A stretch of DNA of 34,623 nt, from the NCBI GenBank assembly GCA_009859145.1, contig VRVR01000035.1, forward strand, positions 203,084-237,706. The letters are read 5' to 3'. Origin of the DNA: Andalucia godoyi And28 (Eukaryota; Protista; Jakobida). The position numbers were made by a program, and so were the translations under genes. Under the pieces are notes generated by a model that was not told the DNA's origin, searched no databases, and saw only the letters and a list, made by a program, of their open reading frames with translations. Shown piece by piece: positions 343 to 28,153 of the stretch (position 1 is the stretch's first letter; each line of letters opens with the position of its first letter).

Positions 343-1812
343 ATGAGTTCATCTTCCGCTCGGAGCAGAAGCATGTCGGTTGCGCCGTCGAAACACGCAT
401 CAAACATTCTTGCTGCGGGTTCTGCTGCTTCAGCATCCTCAGATAGCAATAGCGGGAGGGTGGCTGCGTCAGAAAATGACAAGAAAGCCGCGATGCATGA
501 TGAATTGATGAATCGACAATCACAAGCATTCGCAGAAATTCATTCCTTACGAAACCAGGTATTCCGATTAGAATCTCTTGTGACGTCTCTCATGAAGGAA
601 GTCTCGGATTTGCGATCCGAAGTCGCAAACAGTATGCGTTCTTTTTTCTTCTTCCTTTATTTTACTGTGTGTACATTTCACTTCGTTTGCAATCCGATTT
701 TCTTACGGTATTCTCTGCTTTCTTATTTTGTGCAAGTGAAACAACCCGCAGAAGCAAAGGACACTGAAGTATTACAAGTCGAGAACGAAGAGGCGGCGGC
801 GGTGACAGTGGACGCTACCGAGGAGGTTGTGGCGAATGAGAAAGGCTATTCTGTCTCCACGCTGTCGTCTCCAAAGTCGACATCATCGCAGTCAAATGGG
901 CCGTCCGCTTCATTCTCAGCACAACCCAAACCGCCAGTGCCAGCACCGCTGCTTCCATCGTCATCGTCGTTGTCCGCGGACATGGACGACATGGAGAGCG
1001 TTGCAGCCATCTTCGACGAGTATCGAACCGCATTATCGTCGATATTCATGTTTTATGCATACTGCTCGAACCAAAACAAGGCCGAATGCGCACTGGATCG
1101 CCGAGGCGCCTTTCGGTTCGCAAAGGACTGCGGGATCGTGTCCCTTATCTCCAGTGATCTGACTATAGATTTGCTGTTTACTCGGGTTTTGAAATCGCGG
1201 CTTGCTTCTGCGTCCGTGGCTTTGGCCGAGGAGATATCGCAGCAGGAATTTCAAATGCTGTTACTGGGAATTGCGCAAAGTGCATTTCGTGATTTCGGCG
1301 ATGATCTGCTGTCCACAAAGCTTCATTCGTTGCTCCGGTCTTATGTGGTTCCAAATGCGCTGCGAGAAGACGCGAGTCCAGTGATCATCTCACCGTCGTC
1401 CGACAAAGCTCTTTCCATCATTCTGCGCAACAACCAAAAGATACTGCTGAAAGTCTTCCAGAAGTACGCAGCCGAATATGTGACGAATGGACATGATCCT
1501 CGAAAAGAAAAGGGAACGACTCCGCTCTCGTTTCCTGGATTGGTGGAGTTCATCAAACGCCATGATTTCCAGTCGCTGATTACGAAACCAATGCTTCGAT
1601 CCATCTTTTTCACGGCGACCAACACGGATCAGGTCGCGTTTGCAAACCCCAAATTTATTCCAGAATGCTCGTTCGATGAATTCTTGGCCATCATCACTAC
1701 CTCTGCCTGCGTCATGTACTCCAACCCTGCGTTTGCCGCTACATACAACACAAATGCAAAACGTCTGCAAAAGGTTGTCCAGCGTATTGTCGACGAATCC
1801 AATTTGCAATAG
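343..1812 (+). CDS. Coiled-coil plus EF-hand-like/p25-alpha(TPPP)-like repeat protein, probably with one in-frame intron (632..736, alternative acceptor 751)
   Basis: 489-codon ORF from ATG 343. N-terminal heptad segment (FAEIHSLRNQVFRLESLVTSLMKEVSDLRSEV). Two C-terminal helical repeats (SIFMFY...FRFAKDCGIV...IDLLFTRV; KVFQKY...LVEFIKRH...LRSIF...SFDEFL) resemble p25-alpha/EF-hand-like domains. The F/Y-rich stretch is T-rich DNA starting GTATGC at 632 and ending AAG 736 (105 nt) or CAG 751 (120 nt); both preserve the frame. Confidence 0.7.
   Translation: MSSSSARSRSMSVAPSKHASNILAAGSAASASSDSNSGRVAASENDKKAAMHDELMNRQSQAFAEIHSLRNQVFRLESLVTSLMKEVSDLRSEVANSMRSFFFFLYFTVCTFHFVCNPIFLRYSLLSYFVQVKQPAEAKDTEVLQVENEEAAAVTVDATEEVVANEKGYSVSTLSSPKSTSSQSNGPSASFSAQPKPPVPAPLLPSSSSLSADMDDMESVAAIFDEYRTALSSIFMFYAYCSNQNKAECALDRRGAFRFAKDCGIVSLISSDLTIDLLFTRVLKSRLASASVALAEEISQQEFQMLLLGIAQSAFRDFGDDLLSTKLHSLLRSYVVPNALREDASPVIISPSSDKALSIILRNNQKILLKVFQKYAAEYVTNGHDPRKEKGTTPLSFPGLVEFIKRHDFQSLITKPMLRSIFFTATNTDQVAFANPKFIPECSFDEFLAIITTSACVMYSNPAFAATYNTNAKRLQKVVQRIVDESNLQ
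632..736 (+). other. Probable spliceosomal intron (phase 1, 3n, stop-free)
   Basis: GTATGC donor, strongly T-rich body, AG acceptor. Only a degenerate branch motif (CTTAC about 702) and an AAG acceptor; CAG at 749-751 is an equally in-frame alternative. Confidence 0.6.
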
Positions 1813-2450: not shown

Positions 2451-2503
2451 TCTGTTTCGTCGGGTCAATAGCCGCTGTCGTGCTCAACCATTCACTCGCT
2501 CGC

Positions 2504-2579
2504 CCCACTTGCCTTTACTCGTCCCACTTGCCTTTACTCGTCCCACTTGCCTTTACTCGTCCCACTTGCCTTTACTCGT
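2504..2579. repeat. Minisatellite: 4 exact tandem copies of the 19-mer CCCACTTGCCTTTACTCGT
   Basis: Read directly: copies start at 2504, 2523, 2542 and 2561, followed by a degenerate tail (TGACTTTACTT). No spacers. Confidence 0.95.
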
Positions 2580-2953: not shown

Positions 2954-3442
2954 ATGCGTGTTCTTCTCGCTGTGACCCTGCTTGCCGTTCTTGCAACGTC
3001 GGCATTTGCCCAGAACAGCTGTGGCTCTGGAAACCCGTGCGGTGGCGGCTCGAACCCGTACGACATTCCGACTGCATGCTCGATGTACAATGGCTGGTCT
3101 CAGGACTGCTGCGAATGCATTGCCCAGAATGAGTCCGGCGGAAATCTTTCGGCTTGCAACTTGTATGTTTCCCAGTTCTTTTTTTCTACTTTTTTCTTCT
3201 GTTTCTCTGTTCGTCATCAGTTGATTTTGTGCTCGACACGTGTGCGCGATCTGGATCTAACTTTGTTGCTGCGCAGGAACAACAACAATACATATGATGT
3301 CGGCTTCTGGCAGATCAACTCGTCGAATTGGAATGCCTGCTCGGGAGGAAATGCGCCTTGCGATATCAACTCCAACCTCCAGTGTGCCATTGATATCTGG
3401 AACTGGGGTAGCCAAACGTATGTTTTTATCATCATCACTTTT

Positions 3443-3507
<65 letters not shown>

Positions 3508-3662
3508 GCAGTTGACTCGTGGAGTTTTTTCTGTTTTGAAGTTTTGGGAGGCGGTGATACTAATGCAGCGCATCTTTTTTTGTTCTGTTTTTTATTGGGA
3601 AAATGAACAGTTGGCAGTACTGGTCCACGTGTTCTGGCTGCGGATGCTGCAACTCTTCGTAA
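2954..3662 (+). CDS. Secreted Cys-rich lysozyme-like protein (GH22/SLT-like fold), join(2954..3162,3277..3417,3611..3662), 133 aa
   Basis: Signal peptide MRVLLAVTLLAVLATSAFA. After splicing: CECIAQNESGGNLSACNL-NNNNTYDVGFWQINSSNW...CAIDIWNWGSQT-WQYWSTCSGCGCCNSS*. This has the c-type lysozyme pattern CxAxxES..N...N....DxGxxQIN with candidate catalytic Glu (3131) and Asp, plus the terminal GxxxWxxW motif. The exons total 402 nt and close the frame at TAA 3660-3662. Confidence 0.85.
3163..3276 (+). other. Spliceosomal intron 1 of the lysozyme-like gene (114 nt)
   Basis: GTATGT donor, CTAAC branch point at 3257-3261, CAG acceptor at 3274-3276. Removal restores the lysozyme motif spacing. Confidence 0.9.
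3418..3610 (+). other. Spliceosomal intron 2 of the lysozyme-like gene (193 nt, contains a (TC)30 microsatellite)
   Basis: GTATGT donor, TACTAAT branch-like motif at 3558-3564, CAG acceptor at 3608-3610. Splicing gives TWQYWSTC and a Cys-rich tail. Confidence 0.8.
3445..3504. repeat. (TC)n microsatellite, about 30 units, intronic
   Basis: Direct reading. Confidence 0.97.
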
Positions 3663-3772: not shown

Positions 3773-4267
3773 TCAAGCATACAGGCGCACGGTTCCAAGG
3801 ATCTTCTCCACGATATCACGATCTTTGTGGCTGAGATGCTCGAGAAGAGGAGCAAAGTCGCCGCGAAGCAGCTTCATGATGATCTTTTCAGAGAAGATCT
3901 GTGCTGATGGACGCACCCCGAATGCCCGAAGAACCGAGAATGGCGGACACCATCCTTGGATGGCATGTTGCATAAGGAATGCAGAAGCGCTCACAGGCAG
4001 AATGAGCTTTTTCAGCAGACTACCACGCGATGTAAAGAGCAGCGATGCAAGTGCTACCGTGATGAGCGCAGATGCGCTCAGTTCCAACAGTCGCTCCATG
4101 CCCCATTCCTTATTAAGGACCTCGATTCGCTGCGTGATCTCTTCGAACGAGTGGTCGATGTACGCGCGGATCGACTCGGCGAGATTCTCATCGAGCTTCT
4201 GGTTCAGCTTCGTACTTGCATAAATGCGAGTTCTGTCCACTACTGGAGCAGCCGGTGCGGGTGCCAT
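3773..4267 (-). CDS. Bacterial-type small membrane protein, DUF2892/YgaP-like
   Basis: From ATG 4267 (MAPAPAAP): RIEVLNKEWGMERLLELSAS...[TM]...FLMQHAIQGWCPPFSVLRAFGVR...KLLRGDF. This matches my recollection of a bacterial family with consensus L.ELD.EWD.ER.LE..AS...FLLQHALQGWCPP..LR.LG.R....ALRGDF. Intronless. Confidence 0.75.
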   Translation of the reverse strand: MAPAPAAPVVDRTRIYASTKLNQKLDENLAESIRAYIDHSFEEITQRIEVLNKEWGMERLLELSASALITVALASLLFTSRGSLLKKLILPVSASAFLMQHAIQGWCPPFSVLRAFGVRPSAQIFSEKIIMKLLRGDFAPLLEHLSHKDRDIVEKILGTVRLYA

Positions 4268-4829
4268 CCTTCTAATTTCTCTCTTTCTCAATTGCTTCTT
4301 CTAGTTTCAGTGGTGTGCTTGCAAAACGCAGTGTATGAAGGCCCTGGAGAAAAAGCAGAAAACCAAGTCGGAGGACGAGCGAGGAAAGGAGGTTACAAAA
4401 AGCTTTTCAACTGGGGAAATGTTACTGCCTTTATTTTTATTTCGTGGTTGAAGTGCTACTAGGGGAGGGGAGGAAGAACACAGAAATGTCTTTGGAAGGG
4501 GAATACGCAGTGCTACACTCTTGTACCATGCTTGAGATGGCTTGGCGGGACGTCACAAGGCACGAGCTGTGCACGCACAGGAAATCCCAAAAATGGATAT
4601 GCTTTCCATATCCAGAAGCCGATTTGATCAAGTCGAACTGCTCTTTCACGCTTTTCTTTTTTGGCAGATGATTCGTAAGGGGAAATAAAATATTATTTTT
4701 AACATCAATTTTTTCTTCTGGTGGAAAAAAAGAAAAAGGACAAGTCAACGACGACTTTTGGAATTCTGCTGTGGTCTTGATTGAAAAACCGACTTTGATT
4801 TCTCGGACAACCACGATAGGTGATTAATA

Positions 4830-7154
4830 ATGATGAACGAAGCGGTTGTCATTCCTGAGATTTCAGACACACAGGAAGATCTCATCAGGTACGTCCATCG
4901 CGATTCCCTCTCCTCATGCCGCCGGGACATCGTGCAGCGCATCATTGGTGCCGCAGGGCCCTTCAAGGAAGGGGATCTGACAATTGGCGCAAGTGCTGCT
5001 GCTGACGACGACCAAACCCGCCGAAACGCTCAGATTCTCCTGTCCAGAACTCGAATTGACGATATGTTAGCGCTGCTGCGGGAATGCGTTCACCAAGATA
5101 ACGTCACGTTGGCAATTGAAAGCAGTCTTGAGAGAACCGCTGCGGACTCTGTAGCACGTTGGACAGTCGGAGAACTCGTGGCTTACCTTTTGGATGAGTC
5201 GACCGAAGGGTGCGCTATTGCAAGCCTGGCAAAGGGACTGCACAGCGATGTTATCGCTGCGTGTGTGAAGCTCATGTCCGATGATGATTTGCGAGCAGTA
5301 GGTGCAAAAGTATACAATCCGCTGCCCAGAAGCAAGATTGGAAGCAAGGGGTATTTTGCGGCGCGCGTGCAGCCAAACTCCGCGACGGATAATCCAGTGG
5401 ACATCATGTGGCAGGTGTTCAATGCATGGGCATTTGCGGTGGGCGATTTGATGTTGGGGACGAATCCGGTGTCGAGCAATCCAGCGCAGATTTGGAGTGT
5501 CGAGACCATGCTGCGGGACATTATCGATGCCTTTGATCTTCGCGATGTGCTCCCATGGACGGTGCTTGCGCATATTGATGATCAGAATACAGTGGAGAGT
5601 ATGGACAAGGGATCGACAAGACTGTTCTTCCAGAGCCTCGCCGGCACGGACGGTGCAAACTCCGTGTTTGGACTGTCCATGGAGAAAATGGCGTCATTTG
5701 CTCGGAAACGAAAGTCGGAAGAATATGCATTCTACTTTGAGACGGGCCAAGGGTCCGAATTCACGAATGGCCAAGCGTACGGCTGCGATATGGCCACGCT
5801 CGAATCCAGAAAGTTTGGGTTCATTCGCGCACTTCGAGGCTCGATGGCTGCGCAAAACCAAGGAATGGAGCCGTGGGTTGTTGTGAATGATGTTGCTGGG
5901 TTTATAGGACCTGAAGTGTTTTGCACGCCAGATCAGCTTGCCAGAGTGTTGCTTGAGGATATTGTCATGGGCAAGTTGCATGGACTGTGCATGGGCGTGG
6001 ATGTGTGCGCGACAATGCATATGAGCGTCTCACTGGCCGACATTCGCTGGGCAATCCGACAGATCGTTCCTGCGGGACCGTCTCATATGATGGCGCTTCC
6101 GACAAACATCGATCCGATGCTGAGCTACATGACAACCTCGTTCATTGACCATGTCATGGTCCGACACGAGTTTGGCACGCGGGTCAATGATCCTATGTGG
6201 AAGTTCTTTTGCGATGACCTGCAAGTGATCGACCAGCAAGGAAATCCGGTGCCCGGCAAATTTGGAAATCCAGCGTGGGTGTATGCGCTGTATCAGAAGA
6301 AGAAGCTCCGCTCGGATCGCAGTCTCGAAGACCTCGAAGCACAAGGTCGGAGGCAAATGATCGAGACCATGAACCGTGGAGTATACATGGCGGACGGCTA
6401 CGACGATTCTCCATTTGAAGGGCCTCGGCTGCACACTGATCTGCAGAAGCAGATCGAGTCGCAAGTTCAACGTTCGAAGCGTGTGCTGTACGCAGAATTC
6501 AGCGACGATTTCATCCAGTCCATACCGAACGCACGCGTGTTTTGCACGTCTTCGAAAGACCGAGCGGACTACGTTCTCCATGCAAAAACAGGCGAAGCGT
6601 TCGACGCGACTGAAACGCAGCGTCTCGAGGCTTTAAGCCAGGATCGGGTTGATGCACAGTTGCTTGGATTTGATGTGCAGATTGTCGTCTCGGACGGCCT
6701 GAATGCTTGTGCGCTAATGGACGACGAGAGGAAACATCTTTTCCCATTTCTTTCCAGGCTTCAGAAGCTGTTTGCTCACCACGACCTGCGAGTTGCTTCG
6801 GAAACCATTGTTGTTCGCAACGGACGTGTTCGAGCGGGGTATGAAATCGGCAGAATCCTCCTCGGAGAAAGAGCGGATGCTGGCGCTCAAGGTGGTGTTG
6901 AACGGAGTGGGTTCAGAAAAACTCTTGTGCATGCCATTGGAGAGCGCCCCGGAACGGAACATGACAGCTTCTCTGTGTACTTGACGACAGCATCTCCATC
7001 GTCGTGGGCGAGGACCGACAGCGAAGGGAAGGTGGATCATCACTGCACCCGGGTCGTGTCTGGCATTTCAGACACGTCTTTTGATCCTGTGTCTGCCGCA
7101 GAGGAAGTCTGCAGTATCATTTTGTCAAGTTTGACCACCAAGCACGTTGTATAA
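4830..7154 (+). CDS. eutBC: Ethanolamine ammonia-lyase, fused large (EutB) and small (EutC) subunits, adenosylcobalamin-dependent
   Basis: 774-aa intronless ORF. EutB motifs in order: PFKEGD, RVQPN (5364-5378), GDLMLGTNPV, LAHI, FQSLAGT, YFETGQGSE (about 5733), TLESRKFG, NDVAGFIGPEV, LEDIVMGKLHGL.MGVDVC, DPMLSYMTT. After a linker, EutC motifs: SKDRADYV, DVQIVVSDGL, VRNGRVRAGYEIG, IGERPG, SFSVYLT, VVSGIS. Confidence 0.93.
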   Translation: MMNEAVVIPEISDTQEDLIRYVHRDSLSSCRRDIVQRIIGAAGPFKEGDLTIGASAAADDDQTRRNAQILLSRTRIDDMLALLRECVHQDNVTLAIESSLERTAADSVARWTVGELVAYLLDESTEGCAIASLAKGLHSDVIAACVKLMSDDDLRAVGAKVYNPLPRSKIGSKGYFAARVQPNSATDNPVDIMWQVFNAWAFAVGDLMLGTNPVSSNPAQIWSVETMLRDIIDAFDLRDVLPWTVLAHIDDQNTVESMDKGSTRLFFQSLAGTDGANSVFGLSMEKMASFARKRKSEEYAFYFETGQGSEFTNGQAYGCDMATLESRKFGFIRALRGSMAAQNQGMEPWVVVNDVAGFIGPEVFCTPDQLARVLLEDIVMGKLHGLCMGVDVCATMHMSVSLADIRWAIRQIVPAGPSHMMALPTNIDPMLSYMTTSFIDHVMVRHEFGTRVNDPMWKFFCDDLQVIDQQGNPVPGKFGNPAWVYALYQKKKLRSDRSLEDLEAQGRRQMIETMNRGVYMADGYDDSPFEGPRLHTDLQKQIESQVQRSKRVLYAEFSDDFIQSIPNARVFCTSSKDRADYVLHAKTGEAFDATETQRLEALSQDRVDAQLLGFDVQIVVSDGLNACALMDDERKHLFPFLSRLQKLFAHHDLRVASETIVVRNGRVRAGYEIGRILLGERADAGAQGGVERSGFRKTLVHAIGERPGTEHDSFSVYLTTASPSSWARTDSEGKVDHHCTRVVSGISDTSFDPVSAAEEVCSIILSSLTTKHVV

Positions 7155-7286
7155 TCAACTGATTACCGTACCTGCTCGCTACGTTCTTGTGAATTAGAAT
7201 ATTGTACATACGTATATAATGCTGCAGCCTTTATACATTTACGTGGTCCATCTACCTTCATATCGGGGCACTGTCACTGCTGCTTC

Positions 7287-7402
<116 letters not shown>

Positions 7403-7960
7403 CCTTTTGTAGCGTTGCCTCTTATTGCGATATGATGAAGCAATCTAAAGCGCACGCAAACAAAAACACTGCCATGCGCCATGCGCCATGCGTTTGCCAT
7501 CTTAACAACTCCTTCACACGATGCCCGATTCGTTTCGCACCATTTTGGTCATGAAATCCCTATACACACGCCGACGCGTTGCATTCTCGCACAGCGACGC
7601 TCATTTCATTTCATTATTTTTATTGTCCACGCAACGCATCTATCTATCTTAGGAACGTCTCTCATGCCGAGGGGCGTGTTGGGGGCCTACCCCCTTCCCA
7701 ATCATGCCTTGCATGTTGTTGGATTGCAGCATTGATTATGGGTGATCAGCGATGTTTATCCGTGGCTAGTGTACAATGTAGGCATCATCGTGCAACACCA
7801 CTGTACACCAAACAGGTGCCCGAGTGCATAAACGAAAGCCCTCATGCAGGTTCCCGCACATTTCTCGCTGTGCACGCCACATTCTTTTATCATTACTGCT
7901 TTTTCTTGTAATTTTAGGCCGACGCTCGAAATAAAGACTCGGACGATCTGCAGCAACGGC

Positions 7961-9364
7961 ATGTCTGAAGAATTGCCAGTTTTACTAGAAACCCACCATC
8001 TGCTTCGTGGACACGATGGCTGTCCTCTGGATGTTCTTGAGCTCAACCATCCAAGCGTCGGCACCCCCAGCGGTTGGAACCTATCTGTAACCGTTCTTCT
8101 TGGACATTGTCTGTTTGCCGATCGGCGCACATTGTACAAACCTGGCAAGACATGCATGGCCTATACTCTTGCATCTTTTGGATTCCGCGTCATTCTTCCA
8201 AACTTGCGGGGACGTGGAAAATCTGGCTTGCATCCGTCCCAGGGCGGCTTTTGGACCTATGACGACCTGGTTCTCGACATAGGTTCTCTTTTGGATTTCT
8301 GCACATCATCGTTTGCCAACAGTCGAACTGTGATTGTTGGCCACTCATTGTTCGGTCACGCATCGCTAGCCTTTCTGTCTTCGCATCCACAGTACTATGA
8401 GCATGCGTCCTTCCTTGAACGTTCGGTGTCGTCAGCAACCAGGGGCATACAAATCGACTCCCACCTAACCATTCATTCTTCTGCATACGCGGGGAAGTTT
8501 GCACACGAAAAGTTCAATGGAAAAGTCGTGGGCTGCGTAACAATCGCGTCGAACTCGATGCCGTATCGAATCGAACGAGACTGGTACATGTGGTTTCGCA
8601 AGTCACTCACCATCCTGTTTGGATTTCTCGTGTCGTTGGTACTTGGATATGTACCGGCTCGCAAGCTTGGCATGGGAACTTGCGACGAATCCTATGGCTT
8701 TTTCCGAGCACTCGTCGGTTTCATTCTGTGGAATGGCTGGCGCCCACTCCCCCATCTTCGTCCCGCAGCATTCGCCAAGGAGCCGTCCCGGCACGGGTCG
8801 GATCAAAATTTGAAGAAGCACGAGGACCGCGATGTTCAACAGTGTCGTGGTACCGATGCAACGGCTGCTCTGGATGCTAGACCAGCGAAGCCGCGCACGA
8901 ACTTCTGTCCGGGCAAAACTGGGTTTGACGCCGGCCTTTCCAAAATGGCGCTTCCAAGCCTTTGTTGCTCTTCACTGGGCGATGTCATGGAGGGCATTGC
9001 GGACTGCAACATGTTGTTCTCCTCACCGTTACCGCATGTCGACTACCTTGTCCTTACAGGCAACATTCGCGAGAAGGAGGCAGCATCGAATCAGTTGCGG
9101 TACTCGGTTTCTTCCTTGTTTGCTGAGTGGGAAGCACATGCGCGAAAGCGAATCCCCAAGATTTTCTACATACCCAACGGTAGCTCGCTCACGGACCGAA
9201 GCGCTGCCGAGTCTACTGACCAGCTGAATAGTACGAACAGGAAGAAGCCGTCCAAACTTGTGAAAAGCGCTCCATCGCATGTTGGACTTGTAACCGATTG
9301 GCGCAAGTCGGCTGCATCGTGGGGTGTGATTGCATCGTGGATTCGCCAGCTTGCCGATCAGTAG
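7961..9364 (+). CDS. Alpha/beta-fold hydrolase (esterase/lipase-like)
   Basis: First plausible ATG at 7961 (MSEELPV) inside the 506-codon ORF. VLLGHCLFAD (oxyanion region), LASFGFRVILPNLRGRGKS, WTYDDLVLDI, nucleophile elbow VIVGHSLFGH (8339-8356), and C-terminal HVGLV..WxxIASW as candidate catalytic His. Confidence 0.8.
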   Translation: MSEELPVLLETHHLLRGHDGCPLDVLELNHPSVGTPSGWNLSVTVLLGHCLFADRRTLYKPGKTCMAYTLASFGFRVILPNLRGRGKSGLHPSQGGFWTYDDLVLDIGSLLDFCTSSFANSRTVIVGHSLFGHASLAFLSSHPQYYEHASFLERSVSSATRGIQIDSHLTIHSSAYAGKFAHEKFNGKVVGCVTIASNSMPYRIERDWYMWFRKSLTILFGFLVSLVLGYVPARKLGMGTCDESYGFFRALVGFILWNGWRPLPHLRPAAFAKEPSRHGSDQNLKKHEDRDVQQCRGTDATAALDARPAKPRTNFCPGKTGFDAGLSKMALPSLCCSSLGDVMEGIADCNMLFSSPLPHVDYLVLTGNIREKEAASNQLRYSVSSLFAEWEAHARKRIPKIFYIPNGSSLTDRSAAESTDQLNSTNRKKPSKLVKSAPSHVGLVTDWRKSAASWGVIASWIRQLADQ

Positions 9365-9512: not shown

Positions 9513-10358
9513 TTACAACTCTCGTTTGCCCATGAATGGCACTTCATGAGTGCTCACCATAGCGTACATGACGGCAACGGCAGCAGCAAATACGACAAGA
9601 GAGACAAGGTACACTCCCGTCCAGATAGAATCTCTCTTTCTCGCAGCGTCTGACTCGGCGAAGCAGTACATGGAAATCAAACACTCTTCCTCATCCTCCA
9701 GTTCAGAAACACGAGCAGCTGCAATATCCAAGTTCTTCCCGCGGTACCGAAACACCAAATCTTCCATTTTGCACTTTGGAAGCTGGATGCTGCGGTCCAG
9801 CAGCGCCGCCAGAACCAGATCCTTGACGAATGTGGACTGGACAACCGCTGCAAAGTCTCTTATATGATTCTTATCGAGATACAACCGGACATTCCGCTGT
9901 GCACTGTCGTCCTTTTTCATCCGCACAATGAGCACATCTCCTGACTGTACAATTGTCTTCAGTCTCTGTGACTCTCCAATCACGGTGTTGGATGGCTTGT
10001 GTACGACTTCGACCTTGCTCGGGTCGTCGAGCGACAAGCCACCCGCCACCATCCCAGCCGACGGCGATGACGATGAAGAGGGAGAAAGAGTAGGAACAGC
10101 CTTGGTGACTTTCAGAAGCGAGATCAAGTCCGGAGGCGTCAGTTCCGGGAGCAGATTCTTGATTGGAACCGAAGTCTTGTACGGGGGAAACACTATCTCA
10201 ATGTCTAATCCCCCCGACCGCTTAATCGGACATGACCCCATCGAGAACTCGCTGTTCTCCGCTGTTGTGGCCGTTGTGGCTGTTGACGACGATGCCGATC
10301 CAGCTTTTAAATGCGGATTGGAACCATCTGCAGACTTGTAACCGAACGGACACGACAT
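9513..10358 (-). CDS. Tail-anchored membrane protein with two possible ubiquitin-like (beta-grasp) domains and N-terminal Cys-Pro motifs
   Basis: 281-aa ORF from a true ATG (MSCPFGY). Second CP motif in GSCPIK. The beta-alpha-beta pattern ending LVFRYRGKNL resembles UBL/SUMO-like domains. One hydrophobic helix (IWTGVYLVSLVVFAAAVAVMYAMV) lies about 12 aa from the C-terminus. Confidence 0.65.
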   Translation of the reverse strand: MSCPFGYKSADGSNPHLKAGSASSSTATTATTAENSEFSMGSCPIKRSGGLDIEIVFPPYKTSVPIKNLLPELTPPDLISLLKVTKAVPTLSPSSSSSPSAGMVAGGLSLDDPSKVEVVHKPSNTVIGESQRLKTIVQSGDVLIVRMKKDDSAQRNVRLYLDKNHIRDFAAVVQSTFVKDLVLAALLDRSIQLPKCKMEDLVFRYRGKNLDIAAARVSELEDEEECLISMYCFAESDAARKRDSIWTGVYLVSLVVFAAAVAVMYAMVSTHEVPFMGKREL

Positions 10359-10654: not shown

Positions 10655-12407
10655 ATGACAGCTGCTGCGAGTTCCGGACTTCCGAGTGCTTGTGCAAGCT
10701 GCGTTTTTGCCGCTCGTGATGCATTGGAATGGATCTGCGATCGAGGAAAAGAAGAAGAAGAAGAAGGTGGAGATGATGAGGATGCACAGGTACGGCCAGT
10801 CTGTAGTGGTGCAGAGAAATGAGACGGCGATTGCGGTTCCAAACGAGTTTGTGATTCAAACTGCGGACGTTGCGATTTCTCATAGCAATGCATCTTCTTC
10901 GTATCTTGTCCTCTGTCTTGCGAATGGCCAAGTGTTTCGATTGCTGATTCCGCTCACACTCGATCCCTCCGATAATATGCATCCCTGCCGTTGTTGTCCG
11001 TGTCTTGAGAAAGTCTCGTTCCAAAACGAGTTTTTCGCGTCACAGTCGTCCGTTTTGCACTCGTTTCGACTTGTGAATCCTCCGTTTTTCCAGCTTTCGT
11101 CCGATTACGGATTCATTGTTACCTCGGAATTTCTGGACTCGAAAACAATGGTTGTGTACAGCTCCAGAAATTCAATCGGCGTTGTGGATCTAGAACCAGG
11201 CAATCCTCTTCCTGTTTCTTGGATATCCGCAGAAGAATCGAAAAAGATTGCGTTTCCCATCGTCTCATTTTCCGTCGTGTCGAGACAAAGTCTGTCGTCA
11301 ATGTGGCTGCGGCTCTTTGCAAATCTTACCGTCCCCAATCCCGTCCGCACTTCCACTTCTTCGGACGCGATTGTGATGATGTTGGATGCAATGGGTCAAC
11401 TGTACATGATGCATATGAATTCAAGGCGCATCGTCCGTTTAGAAACTGCGGATTCTGGCAGAGCGTCGACGCCCGTTGCGCTGGTTCCATTGTCGTTTGT
11501 GCCAGAATTTCTGATCGAGAAGCACATGCTCCCGCAAGACCAGATTCATGTGAACATCATCTCCACAACGGATGCTTCCGTGGTTCGGTCCTTTATTGGC
11601 GTATTTGAAAACGGCAGAATGCTGGTTTTTGTGCCATCGTCCGCCAACATCGTCCATGTCTGTAGCATGCATGCAGACCACTGTCTCCTTCAGGCAGGCG
11701 TGATTGGTTCGCTGCTAGTTTTTCGAACAGCAGATCGTTTGCTGAAGATGCTAGACACAAGCAGCACAGATGGCGTAAGTGGTTCGGATACGCTCGACGT
11801 TTCATTAACGACGTTTCCGCTGAATGAGGACGTGGTGTCCTTTCTCGTGAGGACAGATTCATCACTGCGGGTACTCACAGCGTCTGGGAGAGTCATTGCA
11901 GTGTCCCAGCTGGAAATGCAAAGTCGGATGAACTCGTCTTCGATTCCGTCATTTCGCATTGCACAGATTTTGAACGACATTGAGCAAAGCGAGTCACGCA
12001 GAACTTCTCTTGGAGATGAAACAGCGTCGTGGATCCCTCCTGCGCGTCAGTCGGTGCCTACCAATGTGACAGGAAATGCCTACTTGATGGCAATCCGCGG
12101 AGGCACCGAGGTGCAGAAGCTCGTTTCGTTCTCGGCGACCCACTTGGATTCAAAGCACCAGCAATCACTGCGATTCACACAACGAGTCGACACATCTCGG
12201 GCATCCTTCATCTCGTCAGAACAGATTGCCGTACATGGCACAGACGCGGTGCACGGATTCATTTCTCCGCTCTTGCACCACTCGGAATATCTTCCTGTCC
12301 CCTCCGTCCAAGTCTCGGTCTCCACAGTGTCGAGGATCCACGCTGGGCCGCTTGGCGACATCCCAGTCGTGACTGAAGTCCATTCATCCTCTATTCCTAC
12401 TCTTTGA
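10655..12407 (+). CDS. Beta-propeller-like protein, tentatively FAAP100-like; 5' structure uncertain (proposed join(10655..10789,10815..12407))
   Basis: Long stop-free frame 10686..12407 with repeated hairpin motifs (LCLANGQV, LDAMGQLY, VFENGRML, LTASGRVI), followed by a helical segment. That frame begins with implausible poly-K/MMRMH sequence. An ATG at 10655 in another frame reads MTAAASSGLP...GKEEEEEGGDDEDAQ and joins the long frame if GTACGG...TGCAG (10790..10814) is removed. Confidence 0.55.

Positions 12408-13688: not shown

Positions 13689-13746
<58 letters not shown>
13689..13746. repeat. (TC)n microsatellite, about 29 units
   Basis: Direct reading. Confidence 0.97.
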
Positions 13747-13752
<6 letters not shown>

Positions 13753-13947
13753 TCTGTTTCTCTCTCTTCCTCTTTCTGTTTCTCCCTCTTCCTCTACCAG
13801 CTCCTTCCTGTCCCTCTCTCAAAACAAAAAAAGAAAAAGAAAGAATCAGGTTCTCCCGTCGCTGTTTCCATCTCCATCGCCTACTCTGCTCTTTTGGATT
13901 ATCGCTGAATGATTTTACCCTACTGCTGTTAGCGGCCGATTGCAATC

Positions 13948-23975: not shown

Positions 23976-26900
23976 TCAATGCAAGTGTTCCATCTCTTCT
24001 ACTCGCTTCAGCACCTCATCAACAGTCATTTTTGATCCAAAGCACTTGTGCACAATTTCGGAAACCTTTTCTTTCGGCAAGTCAAGAAGCGTCTCCACAA
24101 GGTCTCCGTCAACGAAACCGGTTTGGGGAAGCTGCTTATGCATATGATGGTGGATGGACCGGAAGGTTTCATGGTCGAAGTGACCGATATGCGTGGCGGC
24201 CGAACGAATGGCATTCTGCAACTTTTCAAAAAAGCTGAACCATTCTGGACTCAATAAGAAAATGTTGAAAATTCCGCCCTGTTGCGATCCAGCAAGGATG
24301 GAGGCCTTCACGTTCCTTGTCACAGAATCATCCGCTTTCGCACTCGATTTTGACTCAACAGGCAGCGTGGATGACAGCTGCATGACCAACGAACCTTTCG
24401 TCATGCAGTTCACAAGCTCCCCAACGTGATAGTTGCCAGCAGGATTCAAACGCTTTCTATCCTCCTCAAGCGCCACGTCCACATTTCTCTTTGACAACAC
24501 CAGGTTAGCAAAGTGATCGCCGACAATGAATGTTTCATCATCCACAATGTCTCCGGACACCGTGTACACAGCTGCATAATGCCGGGACACTTCATCAAAC
24601 TTGTTCTCAACAGATCGATAGGCATACAGCGAGAAGCTCTTAATCATATCTCCCACGAGCACAAAATCACCGCGAGTACTGATGAGCGTGATGAAAACTT
24701 GGGTCTGCGACTGACATTCGATCTCCAGTTCGCGATTGACAGCAGACAATGCAGACGCAGATGCACTGCCGACAATTTCCTTCTTTGGAGCCCACTTCCA
24801 CAAAACAATTTTCGAGTTGACAGACGTCAGAAGTTTTCCATTGAAGGAACTTGCACAGTAGCAACAGCCCTTCACTTCTTTTTCAGCAGCCAAGATCAAT
24901 GCATTCTGAGAATCCACATAGAAGACCAAAATGCGGCCACGAGTCGGAACTTCTTCTGAGGGCAGCATGAATCCCGTTCCAACAACGTAGTACGTCTTCT
25001 GATCGTCGTCCTCTCCAGCAGCATTGGCTCCCGCAGAGGCATCCGATGACGCTGAATTAGAACCAGCAGCAGATCCTCCGCTCGCGGAGAACGTGCATGA
25101 AATGATCGAGCACGCCACTTCCCTCGGTTCCAGTTTGAAAACTGACAACAGCTCCATGGACGATTCTTCAAACATCCGCAAGTGCACTTCGACGCCTTCC
25201 GCGCCTCGATCATCAACATACGATCTTTCCGTGGCCACTAGCAGACTCCGCGACGCTTCTTGGTACGCAATCGCACGAGCCTGCTCCTTCAACGGAACGG
25301 TTTTCACGTGCAACTTCTGGATTTCATCCATGTTTCCAAGAATAAGAGATCCAGCTGCTTCAGCGATGGCCAAGACATCCAGTGATGGCAGTGCGCAAAC
25401 AGAAACAACAGGGCGCGAATTAACGTGTGAAAACGACAGTTTGTGATTGCGCATGTGAATGACTGCAGGCCTGTCAGAACACGCGAACACATGCCAAGCG
25501 CCATGTGAGTAGAACGGAACAAACTTCACGTCGTGCGATCCCAGAGAAACCTTTCTTCTGTCTGACAACTCGCATGTGCTAGGATCAAACTTGTACGAGA
25601 AGACAGAGCCATCACCCAGCGATGCTAAAAGATAATCTGCTCGAGCATCGAAGGTATCGGGCTGGAGAGAAGCAAGAATAACGGAATGGGACACCAGCCC
25701 TTCTTCCAGTCGTTCTGTCAGTACCACCGAGAGAGAAGGAAGGCGCAGAATACACACAGCCGCGCCCGTTGTCTGTCCAGATCCCGACTGGTCCCACAAA
25801 CTCAGTACGGCAAATTTGCTCGTGCTGTTCGTCAACGGATGAAGGGACACCGCTGCAATATCCTTTGTCATCTTTGTTTTTCCGATCTCCCTTAGAGATC
25901 CGCCGGCATCCACTTGGAACAGGAAAAGTTCGCCACCTGTCAAAGCGACCAGAACAAGATCACCGTAAGAGTCGGCATGCATGATGGTCGAAGGCGCATT
26001 CCACGAAGAGGCCAGTGCAAAGCCTTTGGTGTCCACCAAGCGTACTTGTTTGCTGGTAACCTGAACGCAGTGTGATCTCCCAAACGGTGCTTCCCGATCG
26101 GTTCCGTACAACGGAGGCTGCTGCGCCGGCGATGCGGCTGCAAGCGGCGTTCCAACATTTCCGCAATGACGAGTGTCCACATCCAAGTCAAAGCCAGCCA
26201 CGGTGCACTCCGCAAGAGTGTCATTCTCATTGATCTGCAAAACACGCGTCTGGCGGACAAACTGCAATACTAGGTAACGACCGCCGGCAAGTGCCCACAC
26301 GCCTTTCAGACCCGGAACATCGAGCATTGCCTGTTCCGCGATACCAATACCCGCGCGCACAATCCGCAGTGAGGAGTCCTTGCCGATTCCAGAGCACGTT
26401 ACCAAATGCCCGTGACCCTGATGCTCGGGATCCACGAGACACATGCTCGTAATCGGACCGATGTTCGCAAACGAATCAATGACGGTCAGGAACGGACCAG
26501 TCTCCGTAGCACTTGACGCAGCGGCACCAGAAATTGAGGGATGGGAAAGCTTGACGATTTGAGAGTCGCCCGCCGCAGACCCGACAAATACGACGCCGGA
26601 GTCAAGATACGCGAGGCACTGGGCCGCAGAGGTCTCGCCATACTTCTCTACAACCAAATCCGTAACATTCGACGCACCAGAAGCACGAAGAGTGAGAACG
26701 TACAACACGCCTCTGTCATCTGCCATGAGAAACCGTGCATTGCCAGCTTCCTGCTTGTTCGAGAATGACCCAGCTGTAGTGCTGTTGGAAACTGGAGCAA
26801 AGCAACGCATGAGAGACCCGGGTCGACCGATGGTTGTTGGCCGGATTCCCGTGTGAAACATCACAGATTGTTCTCCAACCACCACCACCCCACCAAACGG

Positions 26901-27718
26901 AGCCGGAACTGGAAACATCAAATGTGCACGAGGATCGACATTTTGCTGAACAAAGGATGCATCATGCAGCACTCTGTCCTTGACAATGACTTCGTACGTC
27001 TTGATATGTCTTCCGTTTCGTCCGTCATCATACAGCACCGCGAGCGTCGGGACAGCGCACATTCCCTTTGACGGTTCGTAAGTATACAAGAAGCACATGT
27101 CGACCACCATGTATTCTTCAACCCGAACGTTAAACGTTTCGCCGACGGTCCCAGTTCGCTTGTCAATAGCCAAAATCCGCACAAACCCTTGGTAAATCTG
27201 CAACGCAACCATTCTGCAATACGGGTCAACTGCGCAGAGATACCGATCATCATTTTCGTGTCCCTCGGAGTCTCCCGAATTTCCATACGCAAGGGTTTTG
27301 AACGCAATTCCGTTTGCCAATTTTGCCGAAGAAGAGCCAGCGCCATTATCCACCGTGATGATTGACCACCGAAGCTTATCTGTGAGTATGAAGAGACACT
27401 CCGCTTCCACAGCTTGCGCATTTAATGATTGCACTGGGAGTTTCAAGGACTGCAAAGCTTCCACACGGCCGTTCAGCGTAAGCTCCGTCACTGCAACAAG
27501 CCCATTCTCGCCCACGTCATAAAACTCCAACCGATTTGATTTCCTAACACAGCATTAGAATCTCTCCAATTTCAAAGCCCCGGAGGGACACACACCATGC
27601 AAAGAACAAAATGGAAAACATACGCGATAACAAGATTTCTCTTTTTAGGCCCAAGAAACGAGCCGGCCAAGCAGTGGGTTGCCGCAGTCGACTTTTGAGC
27701 CGACACAACATATGCCAT
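23976..27718 (-). CDS. DDB1: DNA damage-binding protein 1 (CUL4 adaptor), complement(join(23976..27543,27624..27718)), 1220 aa
   Basis: Reconstructed N-terminus MAYVVSAQKSTAATHCLAGSFLG...NLVIAKSNRLEFY matches the DDB1 start. Internal motifs: LYLDSGVVFVGSxxGDSQ, NIGPI, HLVTCSG.GKD.SLRIVR.GIGI, CSDRPAVI, DEIQKLHVKTVPL, VGDMIKSF, GFVDGDLVE. Exon lengths total 3663 nt, in frame. Confidence 0.95.
27544..27623 (-). other. Spliceosomal intron of DDB1 (80 nt, phase 2)
   Basis: On the minus strand: GTATGT donor, TTCTAAT branch motif about 10 nt before the TAG acceptor. Removal joins VIA to KSNRLEFY. Confidence 0.92.
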
Positions 27719-28153
27719 TTGCAGTACTCCACACAAGCGAATAAAAGGGGAGAGGGAGAGAGAGGGAAAGGACTAAACAAAAAGGAAACAGTCGGACAGA
27801 TATTAGAAATGAAGAGATCAACAAAAACCAAGAGAAATAAAAGAGGTGAGAAGATTTTAAGTTTAAAAACGTATGATAAAACATAGAAATAAAATAAAAA
27901 AAATATGGAGAGAAAACATGTTGAAAAGCAAGAACGACAGAGTTGAAGTCTCTGACCCAATGAATGACCAAAATGACAACTGTGTGGTGCCTTTTTGTCT
28001 TTCCCGCTCGATTTGAAGCTGTGCCTCAACCATTGCTCAAGTGGGGTGTTTTCCCCCCTTTTCGAATCTTTCAACGATTGTGCTGCTGCTGTTGTTGTTG
28101 TTTTTGCATTGCCAGAGCAGTTGGGGTGGTTCATATATGCATGCATAGAAGCG

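What the first reader, a model, noticed from the sequence alone, without database searches (positions are those of the whole stretch)
4830..7154. Single-chain bacterial ethanolamine ammonia-lyase (EutB-EutC fusion) in a eukaryotic genome
Seen: an intact 774-aa ORF with every EutB and EutC motif in order, including positions matching the substrate-binding Arg/Gln (RVQPN), Asn (GTNPV), Glu (ETGQGS) and Tyr (MLSY). It sits between a spliced gene and a eukaryotic (CT)n microsatellite. Known: EAL is an adenosylcobalamin radical enzyme converting ethanolamine to acetaldehyde plus ammonia. It is characterised from bacteria, and fused forms exist in some. The textbook eukaryotic B12 enzymes are methionine synthase, methylmalonyl-CoA mutase and class II ribonucleotide reductase. 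Inference: a horizontally acquired, probably functional additional eukaryotic B12 enzyme that lets the host use ethanolamine (for example from prey phosphatidylethanolamine) as an N/C source without a microcompartment.
Basis: partly seen in the sequence, partly recalled or inferred. Interest (0 to 1): 0.9.

Follow-up and report, generated by a model that had tools for sequence, protein, structure and literature searches.

The report
Bacterial-type B12 ethanolamine lyase in jakobid
The nuclear genome of the bacteria-eating protist Andalucia godoyi carries an intact, host-adapted gene of bacterial origin for a vitamin-B12-dependent enzyme that splits ethanolamine into acetaldehyde and ammonia, a B12 enzyme type that surveys of eukaryotes do not list, although three other eukaryotes also carry unremarked copies.

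Summary
Window 4830-7154 (+) is an intact 774-aa ORF encoding EutB (aa 35-472), a linker, and EutC (aa 531-771) in one chain. All substrate-contact residues of E. coli EAL are conserved. A confident AlphaFold model matches both chains of the E. coli holoenzyme. The window is nuclear DNA of the jakobid Andalucia godoyi: a neighbouring ORF is 100% identical to ANDGO_00026. Eukaryote-only genes, spliceosomal introns and long microsatellites lie on both sides. The ORF's GC3 and codon usage match its neighbours, not bacterial homologues, so contamination or chimerism is very unlikely. Its nearest relatives are thousands of bacterial single-chain EutBC proteins at only 45-50% identity. It sits on a long branch and the donor is unresolved. 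Fused EAL genes also exist in Paratrimastix, Anaeramoeba and Blastocladiella. The eukaryotic copies never group together, which favours several independent transfers. The host has a cobalamin adenosyltransferase, methylmalonyl-CoA mutase and an aldehyde dehydrogenase. No paper found mentions EAL in any eukaryote. Verdict: a real, probably functional, laterally acquired cytosolic EAL. It is a new member of a known kind. Activity and expression are untested.

The parts
4830..7154 (+). Intact intronless ORF (774 aa plus stop) for single-chain EutB-linker-EutC ethanolamine ammonia-lyase
   Evidence: Aligns over 97-99% of its length to bacterial fused EutBC.
4932..6245 (+). EutB (large subunit, TIM-barrel catalytic) domain, aa 35-472. 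Substrate-contact codons: R179 (5364-5366), Q181 (5370-5372), N212 (5463-5465), E304 (5739-5741), F358 (5901-5903), D391 (6000-6002), M421 (6090-6092), L431 (6120-6122), Y433 (6126-6128).
   Evidence: Pfam PF06751 396.6 bits. PDB 3abo_A E 4e-56. Foldseek TM 0.88, rmsd 2.4. Residue mapping.
6246..6419 (+). Inter-domain linker, aa 473-530 (two helices then coil in the model). It replaces the free EutB C-terminus and the EutC N-terminal microcompartment-targeting segment.
   Evidence: The Pfam EutC match starts at profile position 21 of 235. Secondary structure.
6420..7142 (+). EutC (small subunit, cobalamin-side) domain, aa 531-771
   Evidence: Pfam PF05985 84.9 bits. Foldseek 3abo_B E 1.3e-10, TM 0.72. 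41 of 45 family-conserved columns kept.
4292..4829 (.). Upstream intergenic region shared with a divergently oriented small gene. Contains an in-frame stop at 4821-4823. No N-terminal extension, signal peptide or presequence is possible.
7155..7843 (.). Downstream intergenic region with the (CT)56 microsatellite at 7288-7400, a eukaryotic-type flank

Best explanation
The ORF encodes a functional adenosylcobalamin-dependent ethanolamine ammonia-lyase (EC 4.3.1.7) of the single-chain EutB-EutC type. An ancestor of Andalucia godoyi acquired it by lateral transfer from a bacterium carrying the fused form. That form is common in Myxococcota, Planctomycetota and Desulfobacterota. The gene is now a resident nuclear gene.

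Shown: the ORF is intact, both domains and the fold are present, all substrate-contact residues are kept, composition is host-like, both flanks are eukaryotic, and there are no microcompartment genes.

Inferred: the protein stays in the cytosol, because its N-terminus is acidic, has no extension, and lacks the export signal that most bacterial homologues carry. It binds AdoCbl made by the host adenosyltransferase (ANDGO_07500) from B12 scavenged from bacterial prey. Co-C homolysis gives a 5'-deoxyadenosyl radical, which abstracts H from C1 of ethanolamine held by R179, Q181, N212, E304 and D391. The amino group migrates and is eliminated, giving acetaldehyde plus NH3. Ammonia feeds nitrogen assimilation. 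Acetaldehyde is oxidised by an NAD+ aldehyde dehydrogenase (ANDGO_02334) towards acetate and acetyl-CoA. The likely ethanolamine source is phosphatidylethanolamine of digested bacteria.
For: Intact ORF and domains. Alignment to E. coli and Listeria EutB with R160/Q162/N193/E287/F329/D362/M392/L402/Y404 equivalents conserved. 194 of 221 columns that are at least 95% conserved in 119 bacterial fused homologues are kept, and most changes are conservative. All columns invariant across 40 sequences are by construction kept in the window protein, including EutC motifs SDGL, GRVRAGY and GERPG. The same catalytic residues are invariant in 7 eukaryotic or eukaryote-like copies. AF2 model pLDDT 85.4, pTM 0.88. 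Foldseek matches 3abo_A (TM 0.88) and 3abo_B (TM 0.72). Host identity and eukaryotic flanks. GC 0.531 and GC3 0.577 lie within the neighbour range. RSCU r=0.78 against neighbours, versus 0.26, 0.48 and -0.07 for bacterial eutBC genes. Nearest relatives are bacterial at 45-50% identity. Fused genes stand alone in bacteria, without EutA or shell genes. Microcompartment-free short eut loci support growth on ethanolamine in P. aeruginosa (PMC5821096). The host has a cob(I)alamin adenosyltransferase, MCM and ALDH (PMC7050145 supplements).
Against: No expression, protein or activity data could be examined. The branch is long: 0.47 against a median of 0.11. 27 strongly conserved columns are changed, some non-conservatively (P260K, G297E, D495S, Y546V, D548R). 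Both NCBIfam models score below their curated cut-offs: 484 against 554, and 58 against 230. The host adenosyltransferase was catalogued as mitochondrial, whereas the lyase has no presequence, so cofactor delivery to the cytosol is unexplained. No EutA-type reactivase is known for this organism. The fused form has not been characterised biochemically in any paper I could find.
Confidence: 0.72

Rival explanations
1. Ancient vertical inheritance: a fused EAL was present in the last eukaryotic common ancestor or came with the mitochondrial endosymbiont, and was lost in nearly all lineages.
For: It occurs in four very distant eukaryotic lineages: Jakobida, Preaxostyla, Anaeramoebae and Blastocladiomycota. 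All eukaryotic branches are long and sit near the base of the fused clade in NJ trees, where resolution is poor.
Against: Eukaryotic copies never form a clade: 0 of 200 bootstraps in two data sets. Andalucia is closer to bacteria (0.81-0.86) than to any eukaryotic copy (1.03-1.28). Paratrimastix groups with a Syntrophotaleaceae sequence in 67.5% of replicates. The fused clade is not alphaproteobacterial. No orthologue above 50% identity exists among 5.8 billion clusters.
Confidence: 0.08
2. Neofunctionalised enzyme: still an AdoCbl radical lyase, but acting mainly on another short vicinal amino alcohol or with a non-catabolic role.
For: Long branch and several non-conservative changes at otherwise conserved positions. 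EAL is known to accept 2-amino-1-propanol (PDB 5ysr title).
Against: All residues that contact ethanolamine in E. coli EAL are unchanged.
Confidence: 0.08
3. Decaying relic: an integrated but no longer functional or expressed gene.
For: Long branch. No expression data examined. The gene is not mentioned in the genome paper.
Against: A 2.3-kb ORF with no stop or frameshift. 88% of family-conserved columns are kept against 47% overall identity. Every catalytic residue is kept. The model is confident. Codon usage is adapted to the host.
Confidence: 0.07
4. Assembly artefact: a bacterial contaminant gene, for example from food bacteria in the culture, joined by mistake to eukaryotic sequence.
For: A. 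godoyi is bacterivorous and grown with bacteria (established knowledge). A long microsatellite lies 134 nt downstream and could in principle nucleate a misjoin.
Against: Host-like GC, GC3 and codon usage. No other bacterial gene lies on either side. The upstream junction has no repeat. No bacterial sequence is more than 50% identical. The bacterial export signal is absent. A stop lies just before the ATG.
Confidence: 0.03

Closest known systems
E. coli / Salmonella / Listeria two-subunit ethanolamine ammonia-lyase EutB+EutC (PDB 3ABO, 2QEZ)
   Same: Same two domains in the same order as the eutB-eutC genes. Same fold (TM 0.88 and 0.72). All substrate-contact residues are identical.
   Different: One polypeptide instead of two. 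About 30% identity to EutB and 21% to EutC. No EutC N-terminal encapsulation peptide. No microcompartment, EutA reactivase or EutT genes nearby. Eukaryotic nuclear gene.
Bacterial single-chain EutBC (e.g. Archangium violaceum, Gimesia fumaroli, Syntrophotalea carbinolica, many MAGs)
   Same: Collinear over 97-99% of the length at 45-50% identity. Same linker architecture. Stand-alone gene without eut accessory genes.
   Different: 69 of 120 bacterial proteins carry a Tat-like RRx-hydrophobic N-terminal motif and others a Sec-like signal. The Andalucia protein starts at the conserved core without any signal. It has a long branch and eukaryotic codon usage.
Fused EAL genes annotated in other eukaryotes: Paratrimastix pyriformis KAJ4458855.1, Anaeramoeba flamelloides KAJ3445225.1, Blastocladiella emersonii KAI9183326.1
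   Same: Same EutB-EutC fusion on large eukaryotic scaffolds. Catalytic residues are invariant.
   Different: Only 37-42% identical to the Andalucia protein over the full-length alignment. They never group with it in trees, so they are probably separate acquisitions. Those hosts are anaerobes or a zoosporic fungus, whereas Andalucia is an aerobic jakobid.
Short, microcompartment-free eut loci (Pseudomonas aeruginosa PAO1: aldehyde dehydrogenase, Eat, EutB, EutC)
   Same: EAL works without shell proteins, and the acetaldehyde is handled by a cytosolic aldehyde dehydrogenase (PMC5821096).
   Different: Separate subunits, operon organisation and a dedicated regulator. Here the partner genes are unlinked.
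AdoCbl-dependent diol / glycerol dehydratase large subunit
   Same: Related TIM-barrel radical-enzyme fold (Foldseek E about 1e-10).
   Different: TM only about 0.5, rmsd about 10 A, 14-16% identity. Different substrate-binding residues and subunit set.

Membership tests
Adenosylcobalamin-dependent ethanolamine ammonia-lyase (EutB/EutC, EC 4.3.1.7) | EutB large-subunit domain above the curated Pfam threshold | tested here: met
   PF06751 396.6 bits against cut-off 25, profile positions 6-431 of 435
Adenosylcobalamin-dependent ethanolamine ammonia-lyase (EutB/EutC, EC 4.3.1.7) | EutC small-subunit domain above the curated Pfam threshold | tested here: met
   PF05985 84.9 bits against cut-off 25.8. 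A sequence search of the PDB missed EutC, but the structural match to 3abo_B has E 1.3e-10 and TM 0.72.
Adenosylcobalamin-dependent ethanolamine ammonia-lyase (EutB/EutC, EC 4.3.1.7) | NCBIfam EutB subfamily and EutC equivalog cut-offs (models of the two-subunit proteins) | tested here: not met
   484 bits against 554 for EutB, and 58.2 bits against 230 for EutC. Whether bacterial fused forms also fall short of these cut-offs was not tested. The shortfall reflects divergence from the two-subunit proteins, not loss of the domains.
Adenosylcobalamin-dependent ethanolamine ammonia-lyase (EutB/EutC, EC 4.3.1.7) | Substrate-contact and catalytic residues (E. coli alpha R160, Q162, N193, E287, D362; pocket F329, M392, L402). 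The list comes from established knowledge (Shibata 2010, Mori 2014). The role of E287 is also stated in PMC4413051 and PMC8473560. | tested here: met
   R179, Q181, N212, E304, D391, F358, M421 and L431 are all identical
Adenosylcobalamin-dependent ethanolamine ammonia-lyase (EutB/EutC, EC 4.3.1.7) | Fold of both subunits | tested here: met
   AF2 pLDDT 85.4, pTM 0.88. Foldseek 3abo_A TM 0.88 with rmsd 2.4, and 3abo_B TM 0.72.
Adenosylcobalamin-dependent ethanolamine ammonia-lyase (EutB/EutC, EC 4.3.1.7) | AdoCbl-dependent conversion of ethanolamine to acetaldehyde and ammonia | not testable with these tools
   Needs an enzyme assay
Single-chain (fused) EutBC clade | EutB and EutC collinear in one ORF, with full-length alignment to fused homologues | tested here: met
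   97-99% query coverage for 119 fused homologues. 194 of 221 clade-conserved columns kept.
Single-chain (fused) EutBC clade | N-terminal export (Tat/Sec-like) signal, frequent but not universal in bacterial members | tested here: not met
   Absent. The protein starts at the conserved core and a stop codon lies 9 nt upstream. This fits a cytosolic eukaryotic protein and does not define the family.
Eut bacterial microcompartment (metabolosome) system | Shell proteins (EutS/M/N/L/K), EutA reactivase or EutT adenosyltransferase encoded nearby | tested here: not met
   No such domain in any ORF of the 34.6-kb window
Eut bacterial microcompartment (metabolosome) system | N-terminal encapsulation peptide on EutC | tested here: not met
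   The EutC match begins at profile position 21 of 235 and is preceded by the linker to EutB

The most novel reading that the evidence does not exclude
Ethanolamine ammonia-lyase is a functional fourth family of cobalamin-dependent enzymes in eukaryotes. It was acquired independently from bacteria at least four times (a jakobid, a preaxostylan, an anaeramoebid, a blastocladiomycete fungus, plus uncultured eukaryotes). It gives phagotrophs a B12-dependent route to recycle the ethanolamine headgroup of prey phospholipid as nitrogen and carbon. It works as a free cytosolic single-chain enzyme without microcompartment or reactivase, which implies cytosolic AdoCbl supply in these cells. One environmental eukaryote-like copy has recruited two C2 lipid-binding domains, which suggests membrane-proximal action.
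Probability: 0.55. Interest if true: 0.7.

Novelty: new member of a known kind. Interest (0 to 1): 0.55.

Why it matters
[quoted passage not shown] The fungal survey does not list EAL either (PMC8085122). A working EAL in Andalucia and three other eukaryotes would add a fourth. It would widen the reasons why protists need B12 from bacteria. It would imply that AdoCbl is available outside mitochondria in these cells. It would also give a clean, datable example of bacterium-to-eukaryote transfer of a radical enzyme that functions without its usual bacterial organelle. A practical benefit is a naturally single-chain EAL, which is an attractive form for biochemistry and engineering.

Tried and rejected
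- Exact look-up of the ORF product in the assembly index found nothing.
- tRNA and Rfam scans of the window were empty.
- I first read the 1184-aa ORF at 23976-27530 as SF3B3/RSE1 from its Pfam domains. The homology search showed it is DDB1, ANDGO_00026.
- A sequence search of the PDB did not find EutC chains. The structural search did.
- Ten literature searches and supplement searches of the Andalucia and Preaxostyla genome papers found no mention of EAL in any eukaryote.
- The primary EAL structure paper is not held, so residue roles rest on established knowledge.
- Donor identification failed. NJ bootstraps give only about 50% for a pair of uncultured bacterial sequences, P0002 and P0107.
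- I tested whether neighbours form a pathway. The AMP-binding ORF is a long-chain acyl-CoA ligase, not acetyl-CoA synthetase. The PLD-like ORF resembles PssA/PGS1-type phosphatidyltransferases, not a headgroup-releasing PLD.
- The profile search with eukaryotic copies found no further named eukaryotes in the top 120.
- Short contigs carrying P0186 and P0181 could not be assigned to a domain of life.
Full report
**1. Observation**

Window 4830-7154 (+) is an uninterrupted ATG-initiated ORF of 774 codons. An in-frame stop lies 9 nt upstream, so no N-terminal extension is possible. Pfam finds EutB (PF06751, 396.6 bits, aa 35-472) followed by EutC (PF05985, 84.9 bits, aa 531-771). Both are far above their gathering scores. 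The NCBIfam models of the separate subunits also match but stay under their strict cut-offs: 484 against 554, and 58 against 230.

In the HMMER alignment to E. coli EutB (3abo_A, E 4e-56), I counted positions through the printed alignment. The correspondences are:

| E. coli EutB | Window protein |
|---|---|
| R160 | R179 |
| Q162 | Q181 |
| N193 | N212 |
| E287 | E304 |
| F329 | F358 |
| D362 | D391 |
| M392 | M421 |
| L402 | L431 |
| Y404 | Y433 |

The list of substrate-contact residues comes from established knowledge (Shibata et al. 2010; Mori et al. 2014), because the primary paper is not held. The key role of Glu287 is stated in PMC4413051 and PMC8473560.

**2. Where the window comes from**

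The 1184-aa ORF at 23976-27530 (-) is 100% identical to EukProt entry ANDGO_00026, DNA damage-binding protein 1. The window is therefore nuclear DNA of the jakobid flagellate Andalucia godoyi. Its draft genome is about 20 Mb and compact, and 88% of the 864 curated mitochondrial-protein genes lack introns (PMC7050145).

Other ORFs in the window are typical eukaryotic genes: an UNC80-like protein, a reduced-folate carrier, a carboxylesterase, a dual-specificity phosphatase, a long-chain acyl-CoA ligase and a PssA/PGS1-type phosphatidyltransferase. The window holds several long dinucleotide microsatellites: (TC)30 at 3445-3505, (CT)56 at 7288-7400, (TC)50 at 13689-13789 and (AC)16.

Exons 2954-3162, 3277-3417 and 3611-3662, joined across two GTATGT..AG introns, give a clean 133-aa secreted, Cys-rich lysozyme-like protein (SLT_3). 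The immediate upstream neighbour of the lyase gene is, however, a small minus-strand gene at about 3773-4267.

**3. Is the gene really part of this genome?**

- The ORF has GC 0.531 and GC3 0.577. Ten neighbouring ORFs span 0.484-0.543 and 0.524-0.595.
- Its relative synonymous codon usage correlates with the pooled neighbours at r = 0.78. Leave-one-out values for the neighbours themselves are 0.52-0.88. The eutBC genes of Archangium, Gimesia and an uncultured bacterium give 0.26, 0.48 and -0.07.
- No bacterial gene flanks it, and the upstream junction contains no repeat.
- No protein in a collection of 5.8 billion clusters is more than 50% identical.

A contaminant or chimeric join is therefore very unlikely.

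**4. Relatives**

The best 119 hits are all fused EutB-EutC proteins of about 740-830 aa. They are 45-49% identical over 94-99% of the query. Where named, they come from bacteria: Archangium, Hyalangium, Myxococcus, Nannocystis, Gimesia, Rubripirellula, Pirellulales, Syntrophotaleaceae, Aminicenantes and Riflebacteria. The bit scores are flat, 689-721.

In bacteria the fused gene stands alone, without shell proteins, EutA or EutT next to it.

An exhaustive HMMER scan of 1.84 billion cluster representatives found 945 related representatives. Looking up the odd ones revealed fused EAL genes on large scaffolds of three other eukaryotes:

- Paratrimastix pyriformis, KAJ4458855.1, 836 aa.
- Anaeramoeba flamelloides, KAJ3445225.1, 816 aa.
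- Blastocladiella emersonii, KAI9183326.1, 838 aa, annotated only as hypothetical.

There are also eukaryote-like metagenomic copies. P0180 has two C2 domains ahead of EutB-EutC and sits on a contig with fragmented Ras/Roc gene calls. P0196, 1246 aa, lies beside a 2266-aa orphan ORF. A profile of the eukaryotic copies found no further named eukaryote among its top 120 hits.

**5. Phylogeny**

The trees are neighbour-joining on Kimura distances, so treat them with caution.

- Among its 119 best hits, the Andalucia protein has a terminal branch of 0.47 against a median of 0.11. It is about equally far (0.79-0.90) from all of them.
- With unfused EutB as outgroup, all eukaryotic copies fall inside or at the base of the fused clade but not together.
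- Eukaryote monophyly, in any combination that includes Andalucia, was recovered in 0 of 200 bootstraps in a 55-taxon, 423-column data set. The same result came from a 120-taxon, 729-column data set.
- Andalucia is closer to bacterial sequences (minimum 0.81, median 0.86) than to any eukaryotic copy (1.03-1.28).
- Its most frequent sister, in about 50% of replicates, is a pair of uncultured sequences (P0002, P0107) from plainly bacterial contigs.
- Blastocladiella + P0186 + P0196 is the only well-supported eukaryote-containing group (96-100%). Paratrimastix pairs with a Syntrophotaleaceae sequence in 67.5% of replicates.

The simplest reading is several independent bacterium-to-eukaryote transfers. 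The Andalucia transfer is old enough for complete amelioration and much divergence, and its donor is unresolved. A site-heterogeneous maximum-likelihood analysis is still needed.

**6. Evidence for function**

- Of 221 alignment columns at least 95% conserved among the 119 homologues, the Andalucia protein keeps 194: 149 of 171 in EutB and 41 of 45 in EutC. Most differences are conservative (F/Y, D/E, L/V/M/I). Overall identity is only about 47%, so constraint has been selective.
- The columns invariant in the 40-sequence alignment, which includes the window protein, cover the EutC motifs SDGL (621-624), GRVRAGY (665-671) and GERPG (704-708).
- The catalytic residues are invariant across the seven eukaryotic or eukaryote-like copies.
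- An AlphaFold2 model built on 40 sequences has mean pLDDT 85.4 and pTM 0.88.
- Foldseek matches E. coli EAL chain A (E 1.9e-31, target TM 0.88, rmsd 2.4 A) and chain B (E 1.3e-10, TM 0.72). Diol and glycerol dehydratases are only distant relatives, with TM about 0.5.

**7. Likely mechanism and physiology (inference)**

The protein has no presequence. Its first 19 residues carry five acidic and no basic residues, and the conserved core begins at about residue 15. In contrast, 69 of 120 bacterial homologues have a Tat-like RRx-hydrophobic motif and others a Sec-like signal. A cytosolic location is therefore inferred.

The EutC segment that targets the enzyme to microcompartments in enterobacteria is replaced by the linker. 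No shell, EutA or EutT genes are in the window. Microcompartment-free EAL is sufficient for growth on ethanolamine in Pseudomonas aeruginosa (PMC5821096).

The host already uses AdoCbl. The mitoproteome tables list methylmalonyl-CoA mutase (ANDGO_07800), cob(I)alamin adenosyltransferase (ANDGO_07500) and an NAD+ aldehyde dehydrogenase (ANDGO_02334).

The proposed pathway is as follows. B12 and phosphatidylethanolamine are obtained from ingested bacteria. Ethanolamine is released and deaminated by the AdoCbl radical mechanism to acetaldehyde plus ammonia. Acetaldehyde is then oxidised to acetate.

Three points remain open: how AdoCbl reaches a cytosolic enzyme, whether a reactivase exists, and whether the gene is expressed.

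**8. Comparison with what is known, and novelty**

The enzyme family and its fused form are known and abundantly annotated in bacteria. The eukaryotic copies are present in public annotations. Even so, Zhang et al. [quoted passage not shown] The survey of cobalamin use in early fungi does not mention EAL (PMC8085122). The Andalucia genome paper and its held supplements do not mention it. The Preaxostyla genome paper's supplements do not either. None of ten full-text searches found EAL discussed for a eukaryote.

I therefore class it as a new member of a known kind in an unexpected host. It is part of a small, apparently unremarked set of eukaryotic EALs. It is interesting to specialists in B12 biology and protist metabolism, but it is neither a new mechanism nor unique to this genome.

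**9. Verdict**

The gene is real, intact, integrated and of bacterial origin, and is probably a functional single-chain EAL (confidence about 0.7). Interest is 0.55.

Noticed in passing
window 2954-3662 (+): Three-exon gene (exons 2954-3162, 3277-3417, 3611-3662) with two GTATGT..AG introns. The (TC)30 microsatellite lies inside intron 2. It encodes a 133-aa secreted, Cys-rich lysozyme-like protein (Pfam SLT_3, 29.1 bits), plausibly a digestive enzyme of a bacterivore.
   Followed up: partly
bacterial homologues P0002-P0120 (N-termini): 69 of 120 bacterial single-chain EutBC proteins carry a Tat-like RRx-hydrophobic motif in the first 40 residues, and others a Sec-like hydrophobic signal. Many fused bacterial EALs may therefore be exported, unlike the cytoplasmic or microcompartment enzyme of enterobacteria. 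The Andalucia and Paratrimastix proteins lack any such signal.
   Followed up: partly
L003 8001-11333 (protein P0180, JGI metagenome 3300045996): A 1110-aa protein with two C2 lipid-binding domains fused ahead of EutB-EutC. Its contig carries fragmented Ras/Roc gene calls and looks eukaryotic. This suggests membrane recruitment of an ethanolamine-degrading enzyme.
   Followed up: partly
proteins P0182, P0184, P0187: Fused EAL genes on large scaffolds of Paratrimastix pyriformis, Anaeramoeba flamelloides and Blastocladiella emersonii. The Blastocladiella copy is annotated only as a hypothetical protein. It forms a well-supported group with two unassigned environmental sequences (P0186, P0196).
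   Followed up: partly
window 27995-29572 (+): 525-aa protein with two PLD-type HKD domains. It is most similar, below cut-off, to PssA-type CDP-diacylglycerol-serine O-phosphatidyltransferase, so it is probably a PGS1 or cardiolipin-synthase-type phospholipid enzyme. It overlaps the start of a 200-aa minus-strand ORF (27544-28146).
   Followed up: partly
window 3773-4291 (-): Small gene, probably starting at the ATG near 4267, encoding a protein with weak ApoO/MIC26-like and YgaP-like transmembrane matches, both below threshold. It is divergently oriented from the lyase gene.
   Followed up: no
window 343-1812 (+), 9513-10358 (-), 10686-12407 (+), 7844-9364 (+): Long ORFs with no Pfam or NCBIfam family. 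The exception is 7844-9364, which has only a weak alpha/beta-hydrolase match. These are lineage-specific genes of unknown function.
   Followed up: no
window 2499-2579: Tandem array of 4.3 copies of a 19-nt unit (CTCGTCCCACTTGCCTTTA) in the intergenic region upstream of the lysozyme-like gene.
   Followed up: no
L009 11564-13240: In the uncultured bacterium carrying P0107, one of the two weakly supported closest relatives, the fused eutBC gene is followed directly by an AMP-binding (acyl/acetyl-CoA synthetase-type) gene. This may be a minimal ethanolamine-to-acyl-CoA pair.
   Followed up: no
L010 7685-10046: In an NCBI MAG (GCA_043757515.1) the fused EAL (P0183) is preceded by a separate 96-aa EutB fragment call. 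The gene is therefore split by a frameshift, a sequencing error or an intron. The taxon was not determined.
   Followed up: no
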